Below are positions 9,620 through 48,225 of a DNA stretch of 64,000 nucleotides, in pieces. The position numbers were made by a program, and so were the translations under genes. The stretch's first letter is position 1. Every line of letters starts with the position of its first letter. Where the stretch lies: positions 124,001 to 188,000 of IMG/VR virus record IMGVR_UViG_3300034117_001582. One strand, given 5' to 3'. A model generated the notes under the pieces. The model did not search any database, was not told where the DNA came from, and saw nothing but the letters and a program-made list of their open reading frames with translations.

Positions 9620-10365
9620 AGGTAACCTTATTTACGGTTTTTTGGTTAAATGGTAATATTGAAAGAACCAGAAACGCCGCTTTTTCACAAATTAAACTTA
9701 AAAACCTTTGCAACTTTTTAAAAAAAAATGGAGTAGATGCCGATTTTTTTACGTTTGATTTTTCTATAAAAAAAACTATTGACTGTTCAGTCCACATGCC
9801 TTACAACCCATCCCAATACCATAGGTCAAAAAAAATGAACATGTCTATGAATCATATATTAAAAAAAAATAATTCAGACGTATTTTGCCAATTTGATTCT
9901 GATATTTTTTTAAATGAGGATAAGTATGTTGATTTTTTAAATCTTTTAAAAAATTTAAAAGATAATGAATTTTTTATTGCTCAAGTATTAGACATTTCTG
10001 AAAAATCTTTGGGTAATATAAACTTTGATTCGGTGGATGTTGATTTAAATGGTATTATAGTCACACCCAGAACCATTACAGGATTAGGTGCTGTGTTTAT
10101 AACACACACTAAAAACATAATTGAAGTTGGTGGGTTTGATGAAAGATTTGAAGTGTGGGGTGGTGAGGATGACGATTTAGCTGAGAGATTAATGAGACTA
10201 GGTAAATTAAGGAAGTTATGCCCATTCAATTACTATCACTTACCACATAAGTCTTTAGAGGCCGAATCTAAAAATAATATTAAATATCATGAACAGGTTA
10301 ACATAATAAGGTCTGACTCATCGAATATTAGACCTTCATTTATGAACAATTATAATATAAAATAA
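9616..10365 (+). CDS. GT2/GT7C galactosyltransferase-like protein
   Basis: DSD, GGFDERFEVWGGEDDD, YHLPH. Confidence 0.8.
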   Translation: MKVTLFTVFWLNGNIERTRNAAFSQIKLKNLCNFLKKNGVDADFFTFDFSIKKTIDCSVHMPYNPSQYHRSKKMNMSMNHILKKNNSDVFCQFDSDIFLNEDKYVDFLNLLKNLKDNEFFIAQVLDISEKSLGNINFDSVDVDLNGIIVTPRTITGLGAVFITHTKNIIEVGGFDERFEVWGGEDDDLAERLMRLGKLRKLCPFNYYHLPHKSLEAESKNNIKYHEQVNIIRSDSSNIRPSFMNNYNIK

Positions 10366-10367
10366 AT

Positions 10368-11627
10368 ATGAAAAAAATAATTAAATTTAATCCTTTATCA
10401 CTATTAACCCCCTTAAGGTTTGACATTAATGCTAAGATTTTTTACGCAAAACATAGAAATTTAAACTCCGAATACCCTAAAGAACTTTATTTAGAACATA
10501 TTCGCGTATGGAATGGATTTTTTGAGTCTTATCCTGAAAAAAATAAACCTGAAGATTTTATTAATTCATTTAATATCACTTTAGAGTCTATTTTAAGGTT
10601 TGGGTTTAAATCTCCTGAGAAAAATTATATACCGTTAAAAAACAATTCCCCATATAATGGGTCACATAGGGTGGCCGCCAGTATAGTTTCTGATGTTGAA
10701 ATTTATGGGATGGAGGATGATAGTAATGGACAACACATATGTGACTATAGATTTTTTAAACAAAAAGGACTTTCTGATGTTTATTTAGATGAAATGGCTT
10801 TAGAATATGTAAGAAATAAAAAAAACACATACACAATAAGTATTTTTTCGTCAGATAAAAAAGACCTATCATTAGCAGTAGAAACAATAAAAAAACATTC
10901 AAATATTGTTTACAACAAAGAAATAAACTTTACGGAGTTAGGTAAACATAATTACATAATAGAACTTTATAGGTTTGAAAAATGGATAGGTAATCACCAC
11001 TCAGAATACGGGGGAGCGAAACATAAAATGTCCAACTGTTTTAGAAATTCAAATAAAATACAACTATTTGTTGTGGAATGCGACAATATAGAAAAATTGT
11101 TATTATGTAAGAAAGAAATTAGAGATTACTACAAAGAAGAAAACCATTCTGTACATATTAACGATACTCAAGAAGAGACGTGGAGAATATGTTCAACGTT
11201 ATTAAATAAAAATTCTTTGTGGGTTATTAATAATGTAAAACAACCGAATTATGACAATTTTATTTCATTATTTAGTCAGTATCGGGACGAAATAAAAAAC
11301 CAAGATATTAATAAATTTTGTATTACGTCAAGTTCGGTCCTATCTCTTTTTTCAATTAGAGAATGTAACGACATTGATTTTATTACTACCGATGTTAGTT
11401 ATGTTGATAAGAAAGATGGTAATGTATCCAGTCACGAAAACCAATTAAAATATTACCCGTACCATAAAGACGATATAATTATAAACCCTAATTTACATTT
11501 TTATTTTATGGGTTATAAATTTACAACATTAGACGTATTAAAAAAAATGAAAGAGAGTAGAGGAGAACAAAAGGATAAAAATGACGTGTTATTAATAAAC
11601 GATTTTACAATAAAAAATAAAAAATAA
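10368..11627 (+). CDS. hypothetical glycan-locus protein (ParB-like GSHR motif, C-terminal NTase-like DID)
   Basis: NGSHRVAA; SSSVLSLFSIRECNDIDF. Confidence 0.5.
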   Translation: MKKIIKFNPLSLLTPLRFDINAKIFYAKHRNLNSEYPKELYLEHIRVWNGFFESYPEKNKPEDFINSFNITLESILRFGFKSPEKNYIPLKNNSPYNGSHRVAASIVSDVEIYGMEDDSNGQHICDYRFFKQKGLSDVYLDEMALEYVRNKKNTYTISIFSSDKKDLSLAVETIKKHSNIVYNKEINFTELGKHNYIIELYRFEKWIGNHHSEYGGAKHKMSNCFRNSNKIQLFVVECDNIEKLLLCKKEIRDYYKEENHSVHINDTQEETWRICSTLLNKNSLWVINNVKQPNYDNFISLFSQYRDEIKNQDINKFCITSSSVLSLFSIRECNDIDFITTDVSYVDKKDGNVSSHENQLKYYPYHKDDIIINPNLHFYFMGYKFTTLDVLKKMKESRGEQKDKNDVLLINDFTIKNKK

Positions 11628-11631
11628 AATA

Positions 11632-12486
11632 ATGAATAATAATAAAAAAATAAAAATAGGATTTACAGACTTTTGGGGTGGATTTAATCCAACAACAGAC
11701 CCCATATTTAGTTTATTACTAAACAAACATTACGATGTAATTTATGATAACATAAACCCTGATGTGTTATTTTTTAGTGTAGACGGGGACACACATAAAC
11801 AATATAATTGTAAAAAAATTCTATTCACTCCTGAAAATTTTTATTCTCATAGGTATCGACCTTTAGATTTTACATTAGGAGAGGATAACCTTTACAAATA
11901 TGCGGACTACAGTATAACAGGATTTGATACGGGTAATGAGAAAAATTTTAGATTACCTTGCTATATCAGAAGGTACGGCCATAATATTAAGGATACTATA
12001 AATGATAGAACGATACCTAAAAAATCTAAAAAGATTCTTTATCTACAAAGAAACTGCGTACAATTTAGAGACGAATTTGTTTTAAAATTACAAAAACACA
12101 TAGAAGTTGATTGTTTAGGTAATTGTATCAGAAATAAAAACATCGATGTAATCGATAAAATAGAATTTATGAAAGATTACAAATTTGTCATGTCTTTTGA
12201 GAACTCCTCCTACCCTGGATATAATACGGAAAAACTTGTCGATGGATTCATCTCTAAAACTATACCAATTTATTGGGGAGATACCAACGTAAATTCTGAC
12301 TATAACCCTAAATCTTTTTTAAGTTACCACGATTATAATAATCAAGACATATTAATTGAAAAAATATTAGAACTTGATAATGATGATTCTAAGTATAATC
12401 AAATGTTACTTGAGCAACCTATAATTAATTATAGCCTTTTTGATGAAAATAAATTGATTAATTTTTTAAACAAAATATTATTATGA
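11632..12486 (+). CDS. GT10 alpha-1,3-fucosyltransferase-like
   Basis: YKFVMSFENSSYPGYNTEKL...IPIYWG is the GT10 motif. Confidence 0.9.
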   Translation: MNNNKKIKIGFTDFWGGFNPTTDPIFSLLLNKHYDVIYDNINPDVLFFSVDGDTHKQYNCKKILFTPENFYSHRYRPLDFTLGEDNLYKYADYSITGFDTGNEKNFRLPCYIRRYGHNIKDTINDRTIPKKSKKILYLQRNCVQFRDEFVLKLQKHIEVDCLGNCIRNKNIDVIDKIEFMKDYKFVMSFENSSYPGYNTEKLVDGFISKTIPIYWGDTNVNSDYNPKSFLSYHDYNNQDILIEKILELDNDDSKYNQMLLEQPIINYSLFDENKLINFLNKILL

Positions 12487-12893
12487 TAAAAATATATTCA
12501 AAAGTAGACACAACAAAATTATTACATATTATAGTAAAAAAAGAAGATATGACACCAGGTAGACAAGATATTGTACCTGAAGAAAATTTTATACAGTGTT
12601 CTATATTAAATTTAGAAAAAGACAAAACATTTAGACCACATAAACACGTTTGGAAAAGAAGAGATATAGACGTAATTGCCCAAGAAAGTTGGGTTATTAT
12701 TCAAGGGAGTGTTAAATGTATTTTTTATGATTTAGACGATACAATTTTAGTCGAACATATATTAAACGTTGGTGATTCAAGTTTTACTTTAGAGGGCGGA
12801 CATAACTACTTGATTTTAGAAGAAAATACATTAATTTATGAATATAAAACAGGTCCTTATGAGGGCCAAATAAATGATAAAACTTTTATTTAA
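12483..12893 (+). CDS. cupin-fold sugar-modifying protein (WbuC-like)
   Basis: PHKH...QE...GGH...EYKTGPY. Confidence 0.65.
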   Translation: MIKIYSKVDTTKLLHIIVKKEDMTPGRQDIVPEENFIQCSILNLEKDKTFRPHKHVWKRRDIDVIAQESWVIIQGSVKCIFYDLDDTILVEHILNVGDSSFTLEGGHNYLILEENTLIYEYKTGPYEGQINDKTFI

Positions 12894-39654: not shown

Positions 39655-40404
39655 TTATTTTAAATTTTCTTGCTCTAAAGATAATTTTTTATCTGCAATT
39701 TTATTTTTAAAGTCCTCAAGTTTAGAAATATACCCGTTTCTTCTTAGATATTTAAACACTAAATTCTCATAAGAAAACTCTCCTTCTTTTTTAAGACCAC
39801 AAGCTCTATACTTTCTTAATTTTTCCTTATACTTCTTAACGAGTTTAATTGCCTCCCCTAAATCTTCATCTTTAGCGTTCTCTAAAACCCCATCAATAAT
39901 ATCCATCCATTGTTGTGATTTATCTTTTAATTTTTTTTCGTCAATTGTGAAGTTTTCTTTTTCAGGTACTCTAACCCATTTATTGTTTAAAATTGAGTAT
40001 GATCCGGCACTTTCTTCCGATTCATTAATGTCTTGAGCGAATAACTCAGTTTCAAACCCTTTGATTCTTATATCGTGGGCGGCATTGAATACCGTTTTTT
40101 TAAGTCTAAACAGTTCTTTATGTAGTTCAACATCCCCACCAAATTCTTTTGGGTCATATAAAATATGAATATCAAAATCTGAAAACTCACTCCAATTATA
40201 TCCGGCTAATGATCCAATAAAAATTATATCGTGTACAAAAAAATCATAATCCAAATAATCTATGAATAATTGTGCAACCTTAAGTAATCGTTTTCTTATT
40301 TCAGGTTTTAGTTTGTAATCACCTTCATTAGGTTCGTCCCATATATCAGGATTTAATTCGTCTTGTAAGTAAAAACTATTAATGATTTTTTTATCGTTCA
40401 TCAT
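39655..40404 (-). CDS. Pol-beta superfamily nucleotidyltransferase
   Basis: IFIGSLAGYNWSEFSDFDIHI (GS...DxD), later ELFAQD. Confidence 0.75.
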   Translation of the reverse strand: MMNDKKIINSFYLQDELNPDIWDEPNEGDYKLKPEIRKRLLKVAQLFIDYLDYDFFVHDIIFIGSLAGYNWSEFSDFDIHILYDPKEFGGDVELHKELFRLKKTVFNAAHDIRIKGFETELFAQDINESEESAGSYSILNNKWVRVPEKENFTIDEKKLKDKSQQWMDIIDGVLENAKDEDLGEAIKLVKKYKEKLRKYRACGLKKEGEFSYENLVFKYLRRNGYISKLEDFKNKIADKKLSLEQENLK

Positions 40405-40421
40405 ACATATAAATACCTATG

Positions 40422-40676
40422 TTATTCTGTTTCTTCTATTTTTTTGTACTTGTACTGTTTTGCAATATCAGTATTAAAGTATTTTCCTTGTGATTCTGCC
40501 AATCTAAATTGTGCATATGTTTTGTGTGGAACATCTTCATATTCGTATATAATTCCGTTTTTGAATGTTGCCATTAATTTATTAGTTTCGCTATCGTATT
40601 CAGTTTTAACTAAATTTGAAGATTCGATTTCACAAATTATTTTTGTTCCGTCTATTGTTGTTCTTTTAATCGCCAT
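40422..40676 (-). CDS. KTSC-domain protein
   Basis: SSNL...YD..T..L...FKNG..YEY.DVP...Y..F..AES.GKYFN..I. Confidence 0.9.
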   Translation of the reverse strand: MAIKRTTIDGTKIICEIESSNLVKTEYDSETNKLMATFKNGIIYEYEDVPHKTYAQFRLAESQGKYFNTDIAKQYKYKKIEETE

Positions 40677-40977
40677 TTGGGTTTGGTTTTCTTAATGGGG
40701 TTATGTCATCTATATGACGAAGTTTATCCATAACATAATAATGAACTTTAGTTCCGTCAACATCAAAACCGTAATCTTTAATTGTTTGGTCTATTTCTCT
40801 AACCAATGGTGGTAATTCAGAATGTAAAAACATTAAATCTTGCGGATAATATGGTGGTTTTTCAATATCCTTTTCTGTCCACCCTTCTTTTTGAAAAATT
40901 TTTCTCATTTTAAAGTAAATTTCCTCTAAATTTTTTGTTAGCTGCAAAGCATCTGCAAATTTTTCCCATGACTCCAT
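40666..40977 (-). CDS. hypothetical protein
   Basis: 103 aa; TATTTATA upstream (40981-40988). Confidence 0.65.
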   Translation of the reverse strand: MESWEKFADALQLTKNLEEIYFKMRKIFQKEGWTEKDIEKPPYYPQDLMFLHSELPPLVREIDQTIKDYGFDVDGTKVHYYVMDKLRHIDDITPLRKPNPNGD

Positions 40978-41089: not shown

Positions 41090-43135
41090 ATGATAGATTC
41101 GGCGGACGGAACAGAAAAACCAAAAAACAAAAACCAAGACGGTTCAGGAAAAACACCAGTTTTAGATAACTTTTCAAGGGATTTAATTAAATTGGCGGAA
41201 GAAGGGAAATTAGATCCGGTTATTGGTCGTGAGGATGAAATAAATAGAATAGCTCAAATACTTTCAAGACGCAAGAAAAATAACCCAATTATTTTAGGTG
41301 AACCTGGTTGTGGTAAAACTGCAATTGTGGAAGGGTTGGCTAAGAAGATTTTTGAAGGTGATTGCCCACAAAATTTAGCAAATAAAAGAATTGTTTCTTT
41401 GGATATGACCTCAATTGTTGCGGGGACAAAATATCGCGGTCAATTTGAGGAAAGAATGAAAGTAATAATTGAAGAATTATACGCAAACCCTGATATCATT
41501 ATTTTCATAGATGAAATCCATACAATGATTGGTGCAGGTAATTCATCAGGATCTATGGATGCGTCAAACATATTCAAACCAGCACTTTCTCGTGGTGAAT
41601 TACAATGTATTGGAGCGACAACATTAGAAGAATATAGAAAGAACATTGAAAAGGACGGAGCATTAGAAAGACGTTTCCAAAAAGTGATTGTGGACCCATC
41701 AACAAAAGAAGAAACATTAATAATATTACAAAACTCAAAAGATAGGTACGAAAAACACCACAAAGTATCCTACAGTGATGATATTTTAAAACTATGTGTT
41801 GAGTTGGCGGATAGATATATTACCGATCGCGAATTCCCTGATAAAGCATTTGATATTATTGATGAGGTTGGTGCTCGTTCGCAGGTGGAAATTAAACTAC
41901 CTGAAATTATTGAGGATTTAAAAAAACAAGCACAACTAATTAAAGAAGAAAAGTTGGATGTGATTAACAAACAAAAATATGAGGAGGCTGCAAATCTTCG
42001 TGACAAAGAAAGAAAAATATTAGCCTATTTGGCAAAAGAAAAAGAAAACTTTGAAAATAATAGAGACCAAAATAAAAGGGTAGTAACCGAAGATGTTGTT
42101 TATGATGTTGTTTCGTTAATGACAAAAATACCAATTAACAAAATTACAAGCGATGAAACACAACAATTAATCACATTAAAAGAAACTTTATCGACTAAAG
42201 TTATTGGTCAAGAGGACGCGGTAGCAAAAATATCAAGATCTATCCAAAGAAATAAAGTAGGATTAAGTGACCCTAAAAAACCAATTTTTAGTGGTTTATT
42301 AATTGGTAATTCAGGTGTTGGTAAAACGGAATTAGCAAAACAATTGGCAAAACATATGTTTAATAGTGAAGATGCACTTATCAGATTAGATATGAGTGAA
42401 TTTTCAGATAAAATTGCGACATCAAAATTAACAGGTACCTCACCAGGTTATGTTGGATATGAAGATGGTTCACCATTCTTAAACAAAATTAAAAATAAAC
42501 CTTATTCAGTTATTCTTTTAGATGAGATTGAAAAGGCTCACCCTGAAATCTTTAACGTATTTTTACAAATGTTAGATGAAGGGTTTTTAACTGATGGTCA
42601 CGGAAGAAAAATCAACTTTAAAAATTGTATTATATTAATGACTTCTAATGTTGGTACTAGAGTCGTACAAGATTTTGGTACTGGCGTTGGTTTTACCACA
42701 AGTACAAAAATTGAAAGACGTGAGGATGAAATAAAATCAGTTTTAGAAAAAGAATTATTTAAAAAGTTTGCACCTGAATTTATAAATAGGTTTGATGACA
42801 TTGTATATTTCAAAGACTTAAACGAAGAAGACTTATTAAAAATTGTTGATTTGGAACTTAACAAATTCTATGAGAGAATTGGTCAATTAGAGTTTCAAGT
42901 TGAGGTTGACGATACTTTGAAAAAACACTTAACTGAAGTTGGTACTGACACTAGATTTGGGTCTCGTATTCTAAAACGTACCGTTCAAAAGTGGGTGGAT
43001 GATGCAATTACGGAAAAGATTTTAACTGATAATCCAGAAAAGGGATCAACTTTTATTCTAACATACAATGAAAAGGATAAAAAGACTGACGTTAAAATAA
43101 AAAAACCAACAAAAAGAAAAACAAAATCACAATAA
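41090..43135 (+). CDS. clpC: ClpC-like AAA+ ATPase lacking N-terminal Clp repeats
   Basis: GEPGCGKT/FIDEIH, UVR-type M domain, GNSGVGKT/LLDEIEKAH, GYVG pore loop, VGF ClpP-docking loop. Confidence 0.88.
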   Translation: MIDSADGTEKPKNKNQDGSGKTPVLDNFSRDLIKLAEEGKLDPVIGREDEINRIAQILSRRKKNNPIILGEPGCGKTAIVEGLAKKIFEGDCPQNLANKRIVSLDMTSIVAGTKYRGQFEERMKVIIEELYANPDIIIFIDEIHTMIGAGNSSGSMDASNIFKPALSRGELQCIGATTLEEYRKNIEKDGALERRFQKVIVDPSTKEETLIILQNSKDRYEKHHKVSYSDDILKLCVELADRYITDREFPDKAFDIIDEVGARSQVEIKLPEIIEDLKKQAQLIKEEKLDVINKQKYEEAANLRDKERKILAYLAKEKENFENNRDQNKRVVTEDVVYDVVSLMTKIPINKITSDETQQLITLKETLSTKVIGQEDAVAKISRSIQRNKVGLSDPKKPIFSGLLIGNSGVGKTELAKQLAKHMFNSEDALIRLDMSEFSDKIATSKLTGTSPGYVGYEDGSPFLNKIKNKPYSVILLDEIEKAHPEIFNVFLQMLDEGFLTDGHGRKINFKNCIILMTSNVGTRVVQDFGTGVGFTTSTKIERREDEIKSVLEKELFKKFAPEFINRFDDIVYFKDLNEEDLLKIVDLELNKFYERIGQLEFQVEVDDTLKKHLTEVGTDTRFGSRILKRTVQKWVDDAITEKILTDNPEKGSTFILTYNEKDKKTDVKIKKPTKRKTKSQ

Positions 43136-43161
43136 AATTTTTTAATTGTTAAAAAGTTTCT

Positions 43162-43169
43162 TATCTTTG
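43162..43169 (+). promoter_or_regulatory. Bacteroidota sigmaA -7 element
   Basis: TATCTTTG matches TAnnTTTG, 15 nt before ATG at 43185. Confidence 0.6.
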
Positions 43170-43184
43170 TAGAAATATTATAAA

Positions 43185-44219
43185 ATGAATATAGATAAAT
43201 TTAAGGAACTTCTTTCAGTGCCGTCAAAGACATATCAAGAAGAAGATATGGTTGAGCACATCTGCAACGAGTTAGACTCGATTGAGGGTGTTATGTATTA
43301 TCGAGACGAGATGATGAATGTCTACGCAACTAAAGGTGTGTTAGAGGAAGGTGAATACTACCCTATGTTCATTGCACATACAGATACCGTACACACAAAG
43401 ATTGATAAAATTGTTGTTAAAGAAGAAAAACTTAAACGACCAAATACCTTTGGAAAAACTTTTGATGATACCTTAGTTGATGTTTTAAAGGCATATGATG
43501 AAGAAGGGAACCCAACAGGTATTGGTGGTGACGATAAATGTGGGATTTTTATTTGTTTAGAATTACTTAAACAATTAGACAAAGTAAAAGTTGGTTTGTT
43601 TGTGTCTGAAGAAACGGGTTGTCACGGATCATCAAAATGTGATGAGAGTTTTTTAACAGATGTTGGTTATATTACCCAGTATGACGCCCCTGGTAATCAC
43701 CTAATTTCCGAGATTTGCTCGGGAGTTCGTTTGTTTGAAAGAGATAGTGAATTCTTTGAAAAAAGTATTTCAGTAATCGAAGCAGCATTTGGAAATGAAA
43801 TGTTAGTTCAATCACACCCATATACTGATGTATCACAATTAAAGAAAAAGATTGACGTTTCTTGCATCAACATGTCTTGTGGTTACTACAACATGCACAC
43901 AAAAGAAGAATTCATTTCAATTGATGATGTTGAACGTGCAATTGAGGCAGGAAAAAATATGGTTTTTATCTTGGGATTAAATAAACACCAATACGAATAC
44001 AAACCAATTGTTTATACTAATAAAACAATTATGAATTCTTTAGTGGAGGAAGATTTTGATGAGGATATTATCCATCAGTTAGAAACTATCGATGTTGAGG
44101 AAAATAAAGATGGTATCACCATTATTGATCCGTTTGATGGGAATGCTATGTTTATCAATGATGATGATTTGGTTTACTTATATGATATCATTAAAGAAAG
44201 ATTACTTAAAAAATATTAA
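43185..44219 (+). CDS. M20/M28-type zinc peptidase/hydrolase
   Basis: AHTDTVH, GGDDKCG, SEETGC, YD, NMHT..E. Confidence 0.8.
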   Translation: MNIDKFKELLSVPSKTYQEEDMVEHICNELDSIEGVMYYRDEMMNVYATKGVLEEGEYYPMFIAHTDTVHTKIDKIVVKEEKLKRPNTFGKTFDDTLVDVLKAYDEEGNPTGIGGDDKCGIFICLELLKQLDKVKVGLFVSEETGCHGSSKCDESFLTDVGYITQYDAPGNHLISEICSGVRLFERDSEFFEKSISVIEAAFGNEMLVQSHPYTDVSQLKKKIDVSCINMSCGYYNMHTKEEFISIDDVERAIEAGKNMVFILGLNKHQYEYKPIVYTNKTIMNSLVEEDFDEDIIHQLETIDVEENKDGITIIDPFDGNAMFINDDDLVYLYDIIKERLLKKY

Positions 44220-45364
44220 TCCGTTCTATAATCCATTGGGTCAAATAGACTCTCGTTGTATACCATATTTAGAATATCATCAATATACGATTCACCATAT
44301 TTTACGTTGTACGTTTTTGAGTCCCTAAGTGCATATTTGACTTTAAGCGTTTCTTTATCAACGGATTTAATCAATAATGTGACGTTACTATTTGGGACTT
44401 TAACGTATTTATCAAAACCAACCGTTGTGTTAATCTTATCAATTACTGAAAAATACTTTTCTAATGTTCCTTCATTATAGTCCTCAAGTACCCTATCTTT
44501 AAAACTTTCTAAATCGTTATCTACATTGTGGTCAAACGATCCATGAAATGCTTCATCGTCCCAAACATTATATTGTATTTCATAATATTCAGGTAAGTGT
44601 GATATCCGTTCTTTTGATATTGCCAAAAATAATAAATCAAGAAGACTATCACCTTCAGTACCAAAACGTGGATATAACATAATGGCATCTCCCCAATGTA
44701 ATTTATATTTCCAAAAACAATGTCTTTCAGAATAATTTTCAATACCAACAGGAGACAAACAATTACAATATGCGTCTTCAATGTATTTTTCAATACCACC
44801 CTCAACCGCAGCCACTTCAGCATCTACATACGACATTGTTATATCATCAGATATTCTAGTATCTACTTGGTCTAAAAATGAGCCTACCCTATCCACACCG
44901 TCACCACCAAACACCTGTAATTTACCATCCGGGCGCTTATTAAAAGCAGTTAAAAGTCCTGGTTGAACTATTTTTGCAACATCATAAATAATTTGTAAAT
45001 GATCCGATGTTAATGCTTCAACAATAACACCCTCTCTCCAATCATCGTAGGATCTATCATCAAAATCCCAAGTCCAACTTCTTCTATACATAGAATCATA
45101 ATATCCGGCCTCGTAATAAGAATCACTACCTTCTTCACCATACTCTTCAGGAAAAAAGAATCTCAAATATTCTTCTAACCCATCAAACGTAAACATTAAA
45201 CCGTCTTGTTCTACAGTAATAACGTCACTAAAATCATTACCTTCAGAATTAAAAAACTCTACGTCGTAAGGACTGATTTTTTTTTTATTAAGTGCAAGAA
45301 TTTTTTGAAAGTCATTTAACTCTTCTTCTTCCTCTTGTTCAAAAATCCTTAAAATTTTTTTCAT
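44216..45364 (-). CDS. acidic hypothetical protein
   Basis: start MKKILRIFEQ at 45364, next to TATTTATA (45370-45377); the longer ORF would overlap the tmRNA. Confidence 0.7.
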   Translation of the reverse strand: MKKILRIFEQEEEEELNDFQKILALNKKKISPYDVEFFNSEGNDFSDVITVEQDGLMFTFDGLEEYLRFFFPEEYGEEGSDSYYEAGYYDSMYRRSWTWDFDDRSYDDWREGVIVEALTSDHLQIIYDVAKIVQPGLLTAFNKRPDGKLQVFGGDGVDRVGSFLDQVDTRISDDITMSYVDAEVAAVEGGIEKYIEDAYCNCLSPVGIENYSERHCFWKYKLHWGDAIMLYPRFGTEGDSLLDLLFLAISKERISHLPEYYEIQYNVWDDEAFHGSFDHNVDNDLESFKDRVLEDYNEGTLEKYFSVIDKINTTVGFDKYVKVPNSNVTLLIKSVDKETLKVKYALRDSKTYNVKYGESYIDDILNMVYNESLFDPMDYRTD

Positions 45365-45429
45365 ATATTTATAAATATATTGTTTAATAGAAAGAATTAT
45401 CTTATCTTTACAATAGTTCTTTGATATAT

Positions 45430-45849
45430 GGGGGTGTTTTTGGATTTGACAGGTATTGGCTGAAGACAAAGGGCACGTGGGGACTGAATTAATCTCCTTA
45501 AAAACTGATTCATTTTTACAGACGGCAACGTTTTGAACAACCTTGAGACTTTGGGACTTATCTCAACTCAAGAAGTTACTGTAGCTTAATTTAAGCACGG
45601 TAACGGGGGGTCGGTCAGACATATAACCTAGCAACAGAAGTCGTTGACGAGTTGGTTTTCACTCTAAAAGAAAACAGCGGTCTCGTTCAGAGGTCTACCG
45701 TAATAAAAGTGAACTCGACACAGTTATTGGTGACAATGTCAAAATAGGAACCAAATATTTCGGAAGGTATGACAAACCTTGACCTAAACGTGTAGTCCTT
45801 ATCTGACAGGATAGACTGGACCGGAGTTCGAAACTCCGCACCTCCACCA
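45430..45849 (+). ncRNA. ssrA: tmRNA; predicted tag (A)GNVLNNLETLGLISTQEVTVA at 45524-45589
   Basis: GGGGGTG/CACCTCC-ACCA acceptor stem with G3:U, GGATTTGAC D-loop region, T arm CGGAG-TTCGAAA-CTCCG, pk1 at 45479-45512 followed by open tag frame. Confidence 0.93.
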
Positions 45850-45852
45850 TTT

Positions 45853-45880
45853 AAACCTCATCTTAGGATGGGGTTTTTTT
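45853..45880 (+). terminator. terminator after tmRNA
   Basis: AAACCTCATC-TTAG-GATGGGGTTTTTTT. Confidence 0.8.
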
Positions 45881-45931: not shown

Positions 45932-45965
45932 AAAAAAACCCACCAAAAGGTAGGTTTTGTTTTTT
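45932..45965 (-). terminator. terminator for minus-strand genes
   Basis: AAAAAAACCCACC-AAAA-GGTAGGTTTT. Confidence 0.65.
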
Positions 45966-46812
45966 AAAGATTTCTTGTATTTTTTCGTATCGACTCTTGA
46001 ATCAATTTATCTAATTTGTGATTATTATATTCTTCAATCTTTAATGACTTTAAAACCGCTTCACCACCAGCACCAACAGCCTTTTCAACTGTGCTTGACA
46101 TCATTTTAACAACGGCAGGAGCTAAAAACTTATAAGATGCTGATAAGAATTTTTTAAAGTTTGAACCAACATTATCAAACTTTGATTTTTCATCCGGAGT
46201 CACCTTTGGGCCATAAAGTTTATGACAATATCTAAAAACTTTATTTTCATCTTTAGACATGACCCTTGCAATATCCTTTTGTGCTTTAAGGTCCTTATCT
46301 TTCATTTGGGATTGGTAACCCTTAAGTCTTACCTCAAAACTTTTCCATATTTCACCACAATTTTGTTTAATTTTTTCTGTTAGGCCTTCAGGTGTCGGTG
46401 TGGTGGTTGTAGTTCCGGTCGGAGGTGTCGCACCAGTCGGAGTTGTAGTTCCGGTTGGTGGTGTAGTTCCGGTTGGTGGTGTAGTTCCTGTTGGTGTTGG
46501 TGTAGTTCCTGTTGGTGTTGGTGTGGTTCCTGTTGGTGTTGGTTGACCTTCTGCCGTTGCAGGAGCTGCAGTCGATTTGGTAAATAATTTATTTATTGCT
46601 TCTATACCCTTTGGATTTGTTTGTGTTTTCCAATTATTGGTACCTTTAGTTGCGTACTCAACTTTATCTCCGGTTTTTCTATATTGGTAAGAGTCTCCAT
46701 TACCACCTTGTACAACTTCTTGCTCTACTAAATACAACCTTTTAGTTGCATTTTCATGCAAATTAATAATTCTATTTTTTTCCTCTTGGGATAATTCAAA
46801 TAAATTTTTCAT
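45964..46812 (-). CDS. putative head-internal protein with PTGTT linker
   Basis: leader ELSQEEKNRIINLHE...LVEQ; Pro/Thr/Gly repeats at ~46390-46545. Confidence 0.6.
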   Translation of the reverse strand: MKNLFELSQEEKNRIINLHENATKRLYLVEQEVVQGGNGDSYQYRKTGDKVEYATKGTNNWKTQTNPKGIEAINKLFTKSTAAPATAEGQPTPTGTTPTPTGTTPTPTGTTPPTGTTPPTGTTTPTGATPPTGTTTTTPTPEGLTEKIKQNCGEIWKSFEVRLKGYQSQMKDKDLKAQKDIARVMSKDENKVFRYCHKLYGPKVTPDEKSKFDNVGSNFKKFLSASYKFLAPAVVKMMSSTVEKAVGAGGEAVLKSLKIEEYNNHKLDKLIQESIRKNTRNL

Positions 46813-46819
46813 GCGTTTT

Positions 46820-47974
46820 TTAATAATAAATACTTTTATATTTTAATTTTTTCTTTGTTGTGTAAAAATAGTTTTCATTTGTTGTTTGCCCTGTGGTCGT
46901 AACTTGTGTTTCAGTTTGCCCTGTGGTCGTAACTTGTGTTTCAGATTGACTAATTGCCTCAAGTTCTGTTTGTGCTTGTTGAATCGCATCTTTACCTTTT
47001 GACATATCTGCTTTTAATTTTTTCTTTGCCCAAGAATCCCCTTGAGAAATTAATTTGTTAACGTTTGCAAATTTTTCAATCGCTTTTGGTAAAAACTTTT
47101 TTACGATATCGTATATTTTTGGCATTTTTTTAATTGATTCTACTGCCTGTGAAATTCCAGACGACATAATGTTTTTAAGCGGTTGTAAAAATTTCGTAAG
47201 ATAACCATTAGATAATAACGCAAAAATATCAATCAATAACAACATCCAACTACCCTTTCCACTTATGGCCATATAAGCATCATATATGGTTAAAGCTCCC
47301 CACGCTACCGTAGTGGCAATTGCTCCTATACCTGTAAAACTTAAAAATTTTTGTACAAGGGCACCCATAGGACTATTTAATGCGTTTCTTAAACCTGCAA
47401 AAAACTTATCAAACCCCGTTTTTTTTATTTTTTCGGCAACTTGGTCATCAGATAAAGTTTGTTGTGTTACTGACTGTCCACCATTAAATGGTATTTTTTT
47501 TTCAATCTCTTTAGATAGTTCACCTTCAGCACCGTACCATTGTTCAGTATTTTTTAATCTCCACGCATATTTTTTTTCTCCACTTTCAAAATATAATTTA
47601 AAGTCGTATTGTGGATTTGTTTTTATATCAATTTGTTCTGTTTTTTGGGTTTCTGATTGTTCTAAAATAAAATTTTTAAAATTTTTAAATTGTGAGTCGG
47701 TAAATATTTTGATATTTTCTTCATTTTCTAAAATGAGGTTATTTAAGTTTTTTTTACTATACTCCAAAATCTTTTTCTTTGGGTATCCAATAGATTTTAA
47801 ATTATCCTCTATTAGTTTTTGAACGTATTTTTTTTGTTCGTATTTACCTTTTATAAAACAACCAAAAGTTGCATCACAAATTCTTTTTTGAAATTCTAAC
47901 GACTCATTTATTGATGAAGTATTTAATTTTTTTGATAACTCTTTTAATTGGTTGTCCGTTAAAATAATTTTCAT
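46820..47974 (-). CDS. putative head-internal/ejection protein with hydrophobic hairpin
   Basis: leader IILTDNQLKE..INES; hydrophobic stretch TGIGAIATTVAWGAL...MLLLIDIFALL; exact 30-bp duplication at 46884-46943. Confidence 0.6.
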   Translation of the reverse strand: MKIILTDNQLKELSKKLNTSSINESLEFQKRICDATFGCFIKGKYEQKKYVQKLIEDNLKSIGYPKKKILEYSKKNLNNLILENEENIKIFTDSQFKNFKNFILEQSETQKTEQIDIKTNPQYDFKLYFESGEKKYAWRLKNTEQWYGAEGELSKEIEKKIPFNGGQSVTQQTLSDDQVAEKIKKTGFDKFFAGLRNALNSPMGALVQKFLSFTGIGAIATTVAWGALTIYDAYMAISGKGSWMLLLIDIFALLSNGYLTKFLQPLKNIMSSGISQAVESIKKMPKIYDIVKKFLPKAIEKFANVNKLISQGDSWAKKKLKADMSKGKDAIQQAQTELEAISQSETQVTTTGQTETQVTTTGQTTNENYFYTTKKKLKYKSIYY

Positions 47975-48002
47975 TAATTTTTTTTTTATTTATATAAATA
48001 TC

Positions 48003-48186
48003 CGTATATTTGTAATTATACAAACATTCCTTCCATATTCAGATTTTAGAAAATCTTGATAACAAACGATTAGGTAAAAAACTTGTTGATGATTATAAGA
48101 TATTTTGGAAGGTATGACAAGCCTTGACCTAAACGTGTAGTCCTTATCTGACAGGCTGGACAGGATCGGAGTTCAAATCTCCACCA
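48003..48186 (+). pseudogene. chimeric remnant: 5' end of the glycosylase gene fused to the 3' end of tmRNA
   Basis: 48003-48100 resembles 48582-48690 (ATG changed to ATA, ~11-nt deletion); 48100-48186 resembles 45755-45849 with 34 nt identical. Confidence 0.9.
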
Positions 48187-48194
48187 TTTAAAAA

Positions 48195-48225
48195 CAAAAA
48201 CCCCTCTTTTGGAGGGGTTTGTTTT
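48195..48225. terminator. intrinsic terminator, likely bidirectional
   Basis: AAAACCCCTC-TTTTG-GAGGGGTTT. Confidence 0.75.

What the first reader, a model, noticed from the sequence alone, without database searches (positions are those of the whole stretch)
41090..45849. Phage tag-and-degrade module: tmRNA with long non-canonical tag near N-domain-less ClpC and a Zn peptidase
Seen: three plus-strand genes within 5 kb: ClpC (VGF ClpP loop retained, no N-terminal Clp repeats), an M20/M28 peptidase and a tmRNA. Known: N-domains mediate adaptor control of ClpC, and ssrA tags route proteins to Clp proteases. Inference: an adaptor-independent unfoldase hijacks host ClpP and reads the phage's own tag, giving an orthogonal ribosome-rescue, proteolysis and amino-acid recycling pathway. 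It could counter defences that cleave tRNA or mRNA.
Basis: inference. Interest (0 to 1): 0.75.

Follow-up and report, generated by a model that had tools for sequence, protein, structure and literature searches.

The report
Jumbo-phage tmRNA beside N-less ClpC
A 292-kb freshwater jumbo phage carries a real, expressed ribosome-rescue RNA (tmRNA) that writes its own conserved 21-residue tag, next to a ClpC unfoldase without its regulatory N-domain and an aminopeptidase; the parts are real and stay linked in this phage lineage, but nothing yet shows that the phage ClpC reads the phage tag.

Summary
Window 41090-45849 holds three plus-strand genes. The first is a ClpC that lacks only the N-domain; its ATPase, pore-loop, M-domain and VGF ClpP-loop motifs are intact. 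The second is an MH-clan (M42/M20-like) aminopeptidase with all metal ligands. The third is a 420-nt tmRNA (Rfam 95 bits; ARAGORN misses it).

The tag is GNVLNNLETLGLISTQEVTVA. Across about 50 relatives, six tag positions (V3, L4, G11, L12, V18, A21) vary only synonymously, so the tag is translated and selected as a peptide. It is unlike the 9-10-residue ...LAA tags of Bacteroidota. A freshwater metatranscriptome holds the tmRNA, ending at its CCA end.

The phage is T4-like and probably a 'moraphage' of Flavobacteriia. It has no ClpP and no SmpB, so it must use the host's. A sister lineage does encode ClpP. The gene order is kept in all 53 relatives that reach the site, but so are the flanks. 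Outside the lineage, N-less phage ClpCs sit without a nearby tmRNA.

A phage proteostasis toolkit is well supported. The specific 'ClpC reads the phage tag' link is plausible (about 0.25-0.3) and untested.

The parts
41090..43135 (+). N-domain-less ClpC (681 aa). It has two AAA+ modules, a short M-domain and the GVGF ClpP-docking loop at residues 532-535. The D1 Walker A reads GEPGCGKT, with Cys where bacteria have Val.
   Evidence: In the tree it lies inside a 100/100-supported Bacteroidota ClpC clade. Bacteroidota ClpCs have about 205 residues before the LDPV motif, against 40 here.
43185..44219 (+). MH-clan metallo-aminopeptidase (M42/M20-like catalytic domain, 344 aa) with a C-terminal extension of about 80 residues that the sister lineage lacks.
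44216..45364 (-). Conserved 382-aa protein of unknown function. Its true start is the ATG at 45364; the 417-aa ORF listed by the tool starts at an upstream TTG. It diverges fast: 40-48% identity where ClpC is 85-90%.
   Evidence: Alignment A1. AF2 pLDDT 88. No fold match in PDB or the ESM Atlas. No Pfam, PHROG or NCBIfam hit.
45430..45849 (+). One-piece tmRNA, 420 nt, with acceptor stem GGGGGUG/CACCUCC (G3:U70), a T-arm and an encoded CCA.
   Evidence: 95 bits. Compensatory acceptor-stem changes in relatives. A metatranscriptome contig covers 45483-45847 and ends in sequencing adapter at the 3' end.
45524..45589 (+). Tag reading frame: resume codon GGC, 21 codons (GNVLNNLETLGLISTQEVTVA), and a TAA stop in the helix-5 loop.
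   Evidence: Rfam alignment. 50 tags, 16 nucleotide variants and 8 peptides, with only synonymous variation at V3, L4, G11, L12, V18 and A21.
45853..45876 (+). Intrinsic-terminator-like hairpin plus T-run directly after the tmRNA.

Best explanation
This is part of the proteostasis toolkit of a T4-like freshwater jumbo phage, probably a 'moraphage' of Flavobacteriia/Bacteroidota.

Shown:
- The tmRNA is genuine and present in environmental RNA.
- Its 21-residue tag is selected as a peptide and differs from Bacteroidota tags.
- The ClpC is a Bacteroidota-type ClpC that lost only its N-domain and keeps every catalytic, pore and ClpP-docking motif.
- The aminopeptidase has an intact active site.
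- The phage lacks ClpP and SmpB.

Inferred:
- Host AlaRS charges the tmRNA (G3:U70), and the tmRNA works with host SmpB to free ribosomes stalled on broken mRNAs in the infected cell.
- The tmRNA appends a phage-specific degron.
- The N-less ClpC cannot take N-domain-dependent adaptor or phospho-arginine input. It docks on host ClpP as a phage-controlled unfoldase.
- The aminopeptidase helps turn the released peptides into amino acids.
- Which protease reads the tag is open. Phage ClpC with host ClpP is the leading single candidate (about 0.25-0.3), ahead of host ClpXP, Lon, FtsH or Tsp.
For: - tmRNA: Rfam 95 bits. G3:U70 is kept in both acceptor-stem types found in the clade, with compensatory changes.
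- Tag: purely synonymous variation at six tag codons, including four different Leu codons at L4.
- Expression: an RNA-library contig at depth 17.9 with one mismatch, ending in adapter at the tmRNA 3' end. Neighbouring genes lie at depth 0-9.
- ClpC: aligns to solved ClpC residues 145-816. Motifs are invariant in 121 clade proteins, and the loop matches Bacteroidota DFGxGVGF.
- Origin: the clade sits inside a 100/100 Bacteroidota ClpC clade.
- Partners: no ClpP, SmpB or ClpS in the 99%-complete genome. A sister-lineage phage has ClpP at 197 bits. The huge phage LR756502 combines an N-less ClpC with two strong ClpPs and SmpB.
- Peptidase: fold and ligands.
- Other chaperones: a DnaJ elsewhere in the genome.
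- Linkage: the order clpC, peptidase, orf382, tmRNA is kept in all 53 relatives that reach the site, including ones at 64% ClpC identity.
- Established knowledge (my own, not tested here): E. coli ClpA without its N-domain still degrades ssrA-tagged substrates with ClpP, so an N-less class I Clp ATPase can read a C-terminal tag through its pore.
Against: - There is no direct evidence of tag recognition by any protease.
- The flanking genes (KTSC protein, orf249) are equally syntenic, so the linkage may be plain collinearity.
- About half of the relatives have 0.4-5 kb of unrelated ORFs between clpC and the peptidase.
- The tmRNA is a separate unit behind a divergent gene.
- Outside the lineage, N-less phage ClpCs lack an adjacent tmRNA: in LR756508 the nearest tmRNA hits lie about 40 and 360 kb away, LR756502 has none over the cut-off, and L207/L208 have none within 10 kb.
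- Tag classes are shuffled across ClpC subgroups and acceptor-stem types.
- In Firmicutes, ClpC needs N-domain-dependent adaptors to assemble (my own knowledge), so an N-less ClpC with an intact M-domain could be poorly active on its own.
- The host is not identified directly.
Confidence: 0.55

Rival explanations
1. The functions are independent and the genes are neighbours by descent. The tmRNA only keeps ribosomes free during infection, and host proteases (ClpXP, Lon, FtsH, Tsp) read its tag. The N-less ClpC with host ClpP has other clients, such as host or defence proteins or phage regulatory and assembly proteins. The peptidase is a general amino-acid scavenger.
For: - Whole-region collinearity, including unrelated flanks.
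- Indel hot spot between clpC and the peptidase.
- N-less ClpCs in other large phages without a nearby tmRNA, beside HSP20, PhoH and tRNA arrays.
- Phages known to carry a tmRNA (the Bxz1 group and phage G, PMC4131195) do not appear in the listed organism and host tallies of the ClpC search against phage records, though 11 organism classes were not shown.
- No tag-ClpC covariation.
- The clp ATPase and 'putative peptidase' are core genes of the moraphage lineage, and tmRNA is not mentioned there (PMC12619734).
Against: - The whole 21-residue tag is conserved and unlike host-type tags. That is odd if the host ...LAA-reading proteases were the readers.
- The cluster order survives down to 64% ClpC identity, even with the peptidase inverted.
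Confidence: 0.35
2. The N-less ClpC works without ClpP. It would act as a chaperone or disaggregase for phage assembly, together with the phage DnaJ and host DnaK, or as a decoy that occupies and blocks host ClpP.
For: - The gene sits next to T4-like head genes (prohead protease, portal, terminase).
- The phage encodes DnaJ.
- Other N-less phage ClpCs sit near HSP20.
- The main clade has no ClpP.
Against: - The [V/L]GF ClpP-docking loop is conserved in all 121 clade proteins.
- The M-domain is the short ClpC type, not the long ClpB type that couples to DnaK.
- The sister lineage carries a true ClpP.
Confidence: 0.08
3. The tmRNA is a decoy or sensor. It would titrate host SmpB or block host trans-translation without productive tagging.
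For: A phage 'tmRNA' that is only a tRNA-like domain (phage DS6A) has been proposed to act by titrating SmpB (PMC4131195). One relative (L061) has an internally deleted copy.
Against: - The tag frame is under peptide-level purifying selection.
- The full tmRNA architecture is retained, with the resume codon and the stop in the helix-5 loop.
Confidence: 0.03

Closest known systems
Phage-encoded tmRNAs: mycobacteriophage Bxz1 group, Bacillus phage G (PMC4131195), and huge phages with tmRNA and SmpB (PMC7162821)
   Same: A large phage carries its own one-piece tmRNA with a tRNA-like domain and a tag frame.
   Different: - The tag is 21 residues, ends in VTVA, is unlike the presumed host phylum's tags and is conserved as a peptide across a large lineage.
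- The phage has no SmpB.
- ARAGORN, the tool used in the huge-phage survey, does not find it.
- It sits 2.3 kb from an N-less ClpC.
Bacterial ClpC (Bacteroidota ClpC; solved S. aureus and B. subtilis ClpC, e.g. 6em9, 3j3s)
   Same: 46-59% identity over D1, M-domain and D2. Same pore loops and the same VGF ClpP loop. The tree places it inside Bacteroidota ClpC.
   Different: - The whole N-domain is missing (about 145 residues plus linker).
- The D1 Walker A carries Cys instead of Val.
- Some relatives carry a split intein at that Cys.
E. coli ClpA lacking its N-domain (established biochemistry, from my own knowledge)
   Same: A class I Clp ATPase without its N-domain that can still feed ClpP and recognise C-terminal ssrA tags, free of ClpS control.
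   Different: That is a laboratory truncation of ClpA. Here the truncation is natural, of ClpC type and phage-encoded. Its activity is untested.
Mycoplasma ssrA tag and Lon specificity switch (from my own knowledge: Gur and Sauer 2008)
   Same: A long, non-LAA tmRNA tag that evolved to be read by a different protease. It is the model for an orthogonal tag-protease pair.
TET/M42 aminopeptidases and PepT (M20B)
   Same: The MH-clan fold and a complete set of co-catalytic metal ligands. In cells, TET-type enzymes finish off peptides made by ATP-dependent proteases.
   Different: - Sequence similarity is very low (Pfam 27 bits).
- No clear M20 lid or M42 PDZ-like domain.
- There is an extra C-terminal domain of about 80 residues.
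- The oligomeric state is unknown.
'Moraphages', 200-307 kb freshwater jumbo phages of predicted Flavobacteriia hosts (PMC12619734)
   Same: - Size and habitat.
- T4-like morphogenesis genes.
- Core genes annotated as Clp ATPase, 'putative peptidase' and 'lysine-tRNA ligase' (the KTSC protein here).
- DnaJ.
   Different: Membership is inferred from gene content only. That paper does not mention a tmRNA, the loss of the ClpC N-domain or the tag.

Membership tests
tmRNA (Rfam RF00023) | Covariance-model score above the curated gathering score over the full model | tested here: met
   95 bits against 47, model positions 1-374. Relatives score 70-102 bits.
tmRNA (Rfam RF00023) | tRNA-Ala-like domain: 7-bp acceptor stem with G3:U70, a T-arm and a 3' CCA | tested here: met
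   GGGGGUG/CACCUCC-A-CCA. G3:U70 is kept in both stem types of the clade, with compensatory changes in L024 and L082.
tmRNA (Rfam RF00023) | Internal tag reading frame after pseudoknot 1, ending in the helix-5 loop, and actually decoded | tested here: met
   Frame fixed by the Rfam alignment. Variation is synonymous only at six codons across 16 nucleotide variants. Decoding itself is inferred from selection, not observed.
tmRNA (Rfam RF00023) | The RNA is made | tested here: met
   A freshwater metatranscriptome contig covers 45483-45847 with one mismatch, at depth 17.9, and ends in adapter at the 3' end. Relatives' tmRNAs reach depth 40-119 in another run. DNA carry-over cannot be fully excluded.
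tmRNA (Rfam RF00023) | SmpB partner | tested here: not met
   The phage genome has no SmpB, nor do relatives G001 and G002. Host SmpB must serve. Compatibility is not testable here.
ClpC (class I Clp/Hsp100 unfoldase of ClpP) | Two AAA+ modules with Walker A/B and pore loops | tested here: met
   Invariant in 121 clade proteins.
ClpC (class I Clp/Hsp100 unfoldase of ClpP) | Short coiled-coil M-domain (ClpC type, not the long ClpB type) | tested here: met
   A single continuous alignment with S. aureus and B. subtilis ClpC through the M-domain. ClpB structures align only in two separate pieces.
ClpC (class I Clp/Hsp100 unfoldase of ClpP) | ClpP-docking loop ([V/I/L]-G-[F/L]) | tested here: met
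   GVGF at residues 532-535. [V/L]GF is found in all 121 clade proteins, and the context is the same as in Bacteroidota ClpC.
ClpC (class I Clp/Hsp100 unfoldase of ClpP) | N-terminal Clp_N repeat domain (adaptor and phospho-arginine docking) | tested here: not met
   The alignment starts at ClpC residue 145. There are 40 residues before the LDPV motif, against about 205 in Bacteroidota ClpCs. No upstream ORF could supply the domain.
ClpC (class I Clp/Hsp100 unfoldase of ClpP) | Works with a ClpP | not testable with these tools
   This genome has no ClpP. The sister lineage has one at 197 bits.
MH-clan metallopeptidase (M42/M20/M28) | Aminopeptidase alpha/beta fold | tested here: met
   Foldseek probability 1.0 to PhTET1, TmPep1050, PepT and the DapE catalytic domain, with TM about 0.5.
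MH-clan metallopeptidase (M42/M20/M28) | Co-catalytic metal ligands (H, D, bridging D, E, D/E, H) plus the catalytic Glu | tested here: met
   H65, D67, D116/D117, E142-E143, D167 and H238 are invariant in 26 sequences. The GGDDKCG and YYNMH motifs align with PepT. Residue roles are assigned by motif, not by structure superposition.
MH-clan metallopeptidase (M42/M20/M28) | Family-specific second domain (M20 lid/dimerisation domain or M42 PDZ-like domain) | tested here: inconclusive
   The catalytic core is about 265 residues. The sister lineage has only 276 aa. The extra C-terminal beta/alpha unit at 295-343 has no assigned counterpart.
ssrA-tag to Clp proteolysis pathway ('tag and degrade') | The tag is a degron read by a specific AAA+ protease | not testable with these tools
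   There is only indirect evidence: a hydrophobic C-terminus (VTVA) and whole-tag conservation. The complex prediction gave no answer.
ssrA-tag to Clp proteolysis pathway ('tag and degrade') | Genomic coupling of tmRNA and unfoldase beyond common descent | tested here: not met
   They are linked only within this lineage, where the flanks are collinear too. Other N-less phage ClpCs have no tmRNA nearby.

The most novel reading that the evidence does not exclude
A virus-encoded orthogonal degron system. The phage tmRNA writes a 21-residue tag that host ...LAA-reading proteases ignore. The adaptor-free, N-less phage ClpC, docked on hijacked host ClpP, reads the tag specifically. The phage thereby gains private control of clearing stalled-ribosome products and recycling their amino acids in Bacteroidota cells.
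Probability: 0.25. Interest if true: 0.8.

Novelty: new variant of a known kind. Interest (0 to 1): 0.55.

Why it matters
Phage tmRNAs and phage Clp-type ATPases are each known, but what a phage gains from writing its own tag has never been worked out. This case offers a short, conserved, clearly non-host tag. It also offers one obvious candidate reader, a naturally N-less ClpC that keeps its ClpP loop, in an abundant freshwater phage lineage with more than 500 IMG/VR contigs. That makes the question directly testable with three purified components.

If the pairing holds, it would be a natural orthogonal tag-protease pair for Bacteroidota. It would also be a new mode of host takeover, combining ClpP hijack with private quality control.

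Independently of that, these tmRNAs escape ARAGORN. Surveys of phage translation genes that rely on ARAGORN will therefore under-count this kind of tmRNA.

Tried and rejected
- Megablast of the region and blastn of the tmRNA against 50,697 phage records found no match.
- BLAST of the tmRNA against 401 Bacteroidota genomes matched only the 30-nt T-arm and acceptor end, so no donor or host could be named.
- ARAGORN found nothing, even at a relaxed threshold.
- orf382 had no hit in Pfam, PHROGs, NCBIfam, PDB sequences, Foldseek-PDB, the ESM Atlas by shape or the ESM Atlas by features.
- The complex prediction of ClpC(1-350), tag and orf382 scored 0.00 with the verdict 'no answer'. It counts neither for nor against binding.
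- I tested the idea that phages lost the N-domain independently several times. The free tree separates the huge phage L084 from this clade, but the AU test does not reject their monophyly (p = 0.159), so I make no claim.
- The sigma-70 promoter scan found fewer sites than the shuffles (28 against a mean of 38) and is uninformative for a Bacteroidota-type host.
- I looked for more rescue or repair genes that would back the anti-defence idea. RtcB, RF-1/ArfB, ClpS and HSP20 are all absent.
- I rejected the idea that the tmRNA is a host fragment. It lies in a 99%-complete viral record beside T4-like portal, terminase and prohead-protease genes.


Full report
**What the window is.** The window is bases 124001-188000 of a 291,867-bp IMG/VR virus record judged 99% complete. 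Genome GC is 31.8%. Just upstream of the finding, on the minus strand, lie a T4-type prohead core protease (S77), a gp20-like portal and a T4-type large terminase. The genome also carries eight tRNAs and a DnaJ. By size, freshwater origin and gene content it fits the 'moraphages' (PMC12619734). Those are 200-307 kb aquatic jumbo phages with predicted Flavobacteriia hosts. Their core genes include a Clp ATPase, a 'putative peptidase', a 'lysine-tRNA ligase' VOG (the KTSC protein here) and DnaJ/DnaK. This assignment is an inference from gene content. That paper does not mention tmRNA.

**Observation.** ORF 41090-43135 (+) encodes 681 aa. It aligns in one piece to S. aureus ClpC residues 145-816 (E 3e-201) and to B. 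subtilis ClpC 155-798, while ClpB structures align only in two pieces. The protein is therefore ClpC-type with the short M-domain, and only the N-domain is missing. Both Walker A/B pairs, the KYRG and GYVG pore loops and GVGF at 532-535 are present. The next gene upstream is divergent, so no separate N-domain ORF exists.

ORF 43185-44219 (+) is an MH-clan aminopeptidase:
- Pfam gives weak M42/M20 hits.
- PHROG 4191 scores 2e-36.
- Two PepT motifs match.
- The AF2 model (pLDDT 80) hits TET/M42 aminopeptidases, PepT and the DapE catalytic domain at Foldseek probability 1.0.
- H65, D67, D116/117, E142, E143, D167 and H238 are invariant.

Rfam places a full-length tmRNA at 45430-45849 (+) with 95 bits against a gathering score of 47. 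ARAGORN finds nothing.

The homologue alignment puts its start at 45364, giving 382 aa. The model is confident (pLDDT 88), but no fold or family match was found anywhere.

**The tmRNA and its tag.**
- The acceptor stem is GGGGGUG/CACCUCC, followed by ACCA, so the G3:U70 alanine identity pair and the CCA are encoded.
- The Rfam alignment fixes the frame: GGC resume codon at 45524, 21 codons, and TAA in the helix-5 loop. The peptide is GNVLNNLETLGLISTQEVTVA.
- In 50 tags from relatives there are 16 nucleotide variants but only 8 peptides.
- V3, L4 (four different Leu codons), G11, L12, V18 and A21 vary only synonymously.
- The consensus is G-[ND]-V-L-x-[NK]-[LM]-x-x-[LV]-G-L-[IVL]-x-x-x-[EQ]-[VL]-T-V-A.

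This pattern is the signature of a translated frame under purifying selection on the whole peptide. It argues against a decoy role, and it argues that something recognises more than a C-terminal tripeptide.

Tags from sampled Bacteroidota genomes are 9-10 residues and end in LAA or MAA, for example GENNYALAA, GESNYAMAA and ADNYGYALAA. Apart from 30 nt of the T-arm and acceptor end, the phage tmRNA has no BLAST-level relative in 401 Bacteroidota genomes.

The clade holds two acceptor-stem types (GGGGGUG and GGGCCUA). Both keep G3:U70, show compensatory changes, and occur with the same tag peptides, so the RNA is mosaic.

In freshwater metatranscriptomes, one run has a 385-nt contig on 45483-45847 with a single mismatch at depth 17.9. 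It runs into Illumina adapter at the 3' end of the tmRNA. Another run holds relatives' tmRNAs at depth 40-119. The protein genes lie at depth 0-9. These are assembled contigs from RNA libraries, so DNA carry-over cannot be ruled out. The depth contrast and the discrete 3' end nevertheless favour a real RNA.

**Origin and state of the ClpC.**
- IMG/VR holds 513 contigs with a relative. The best 80 are 83-100% identical, plus two at 64%.
- The protein database shows the same roughly 680-aa form throughout.
- All 121 clade proteins checked keep GEPGCGKT, KYRG, GNSGVGKT, PGYVG and a [V/L]GF loop in the same DFGxG context as Bacteroidota ClpC.
- The nearest bacterial proteins are from Chitinophagales, Saprospirales and Bacteroidales (49-59% identity). 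Each of them has about 205 residues before the LDPV motif, against 40 here.
- In a maximum-likelihood tree the phage clade lies inside a 100/100-supported Bacteroidota ClpC clade.
- Two huge phages also have N-less ClpCs: LR756502 (642 kb) and LR756508 (484 kb). LR756501 (735 kb) has an N-domain.
- One or several N-domain losses cannot be told apart (AU p = 0.159).
- About ten of the 150 best 50%-identity representatives are N-less. The two whose contexts could be read lie among phage-like genes.

An N-less ClpC is thus a recurrent phage form.

**Partners.** The genome has no ClpP, SmpB or ClpS, and a 96%-complete relative also lacks ClpP and SmpB. The sister-lineage contig has 64% ClpC identity, the same cluster and a 22-residue tag. 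It encodes a genuine ClpP (197 bits) about 20 kb from its tmRNA. LR756502 combines an N-less ClpC with two strong ClpPs and SmpB. The conserved docking loop points the same way. Together these observations favour a ClpP-dependent role, with host ClpP used in the main clade.

**Is it a module?**

For:
- The order clpC, peptidase, orf382 (-), tmRNA is found in all 53 relatives whose contig reaches the site. That includes the 64% lineage, where the peptidase is inverted.

Against:
- The flanking KTSC gene and orf249 are just as conserved.
- About half of the relatives have 0.4-5 kb of unrelated ORFs without Pfam hits between clpC and the peptidase.
- No terminator separates clpC and the peptidase in this phage, but the tmRNA has its own terminator and lies behind a divergent gene.
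- Tag classes do not follow ClpC subgroups.
- Outside the lineage, N-less ClpCs have no tmRNA within 10 kb. LR756508 has tmRNA hits about 40 and 360 kb away, and LR756502 has none over the cut-off.
- No RNA-repair or alternative rescue genes back the anti-defence idea.
- A structure-prediction test of ClpC(1-350), tag and orf382 gave no answer.

**Conclusion.** The parts and their individual roles are well supported. They plausibly serve one flow: rescue, tag, unfold and degrade, then trim to amino acids, borrowing host SmpB, AlaRS and ClpP. It is compatible with the established fact (my own knowledge) that N-less ClpA still degrades ssrA-tagged proteins. It also parallels the Mycoplasma switch of tag specificity to Lon.

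Phage tmRNAs are already known (PMC4131195, PMC7162821), and the Clp ATPase and peptidase are listed as core moraphage genes (PMC12619734). The new points are the tag, its selection, the N-domain loss and the association. I found no paper that connects a phage tmRNA with a phage ClpC.

Noticed in passing
window 48100-48182 (copy) and 45964-48195 (insert): An 83-nt, 90%-identical copy of the tmRNA 3' part (45755-45837) lies 2.3 kb downstream. It lacks 8 nt of the acceptor strand and has its own terminator at 48198-48220. The 98%-related phage L022 lacks window 45964-48195, which holds two minus-strand ORFs of 282 and 384 aa with no family. This looks like an element inserted at the tmRNA 3' end that left the old end behind, as genomic islands do at bacterial ssrA. 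No integrase was found. L013 has a similar extra 3' copy 540 nt downstream.
   Followed up: partly
L068:9995-10285 and 10313-12526; also L066, L069-L071, L075, L080: In several relatives clpC is split into two ORFs exactly at the D1 Walker A (GEPG|CGKT). The first ORF ends with a fragment of about 24 residues beginning CVLGDTWIE. The second begins with about 140 residues ending ...VVSHN before CGKT. This looks like an atypical naturally split intein with a short N-fragment. It would explain the Cys in the clade's Walker A. It has not been checked with an intein profile.
   Followed up: partly
window 45430-45849; L061:16307-16519; L066 (G002:51761-52156): ARAGORN misses this whole group of tmRNAs even at a relaxed threshold, so ARAGORN-based phage surveys would not count them. 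The clade has two acceptor-stem types combined freely with the tag variants. L061 has an internally deleted copy (model 1-131 joined to 326-405). The L066 copy seems interrupted in the T-arm and scores 45 bits, below the cut-off.
   Followed up: partly
L205:3443-4117 (G001:97443-98117): The sister-lineage phage encodes a true ClpP (197 bits). It sits directly after two tRNA-Leu genes and an HNH endonuclease. The main clade, including this genome, has none.
   Followed up: partly
L206 (LR756502.1 362000-376000); L084:4037-4443: The 642-kb huge phage with an N-less ClpC has a sigma factor, a ClpP-like protein (95 bits) and SmpB (168 bits) within 4.5 kb, beside a tRNA array. A GOLLD RNA (275 bits) plus a tRNA lie 6 kb upstream of its N-less ClpC. 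Another N-less phage ClpC (L208) sits 5 kb from an array of 15 tRNAs and a TROVE/Ro60-like gene.
   Followed up: partly
window 40422-40676 (-), 39655-40404 (-), 40666-40977 (-): Three conserved genes are transcribed divergently from clpC. One is an 84-aa KTSC-domain protein (61 bits), probably the 'lysine-tRNA ligase' core VOG of moraphages. One is a 249-aa PHROG 36119 protein with a faint Pol-beta nucleotidyltransferase hit. The third is a 103-aa protein of unknown function. Their functions are unknown.
   Followed up: no
between clpC and the peptidase in relatives, e.g. L051:11981-16967, L041:12087-17175, L022:12104-13055: There is an indel hot spot here. Between 0.4 and 5 kb of extra ORFs on both strands are inserted in about half of the relatives. 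One carries DUF2927; the rest have no Pfam family.
   Followed up: partly
genome G000:C1:33907-34086 (outside the window): The phage encodes a J-domain protein (DnaJ, 91 bits, 334-aa ORF), so it carries further chaperone machinery besides ClpC.
   Followed up: no
window 43058-43221: The A-rich, Lys-rich end of clpC draws very high contig depth (70-256) in the metatranscriptomes. This comes from poly-A-like reads and is an artefact, not expression.
   Followed up: no
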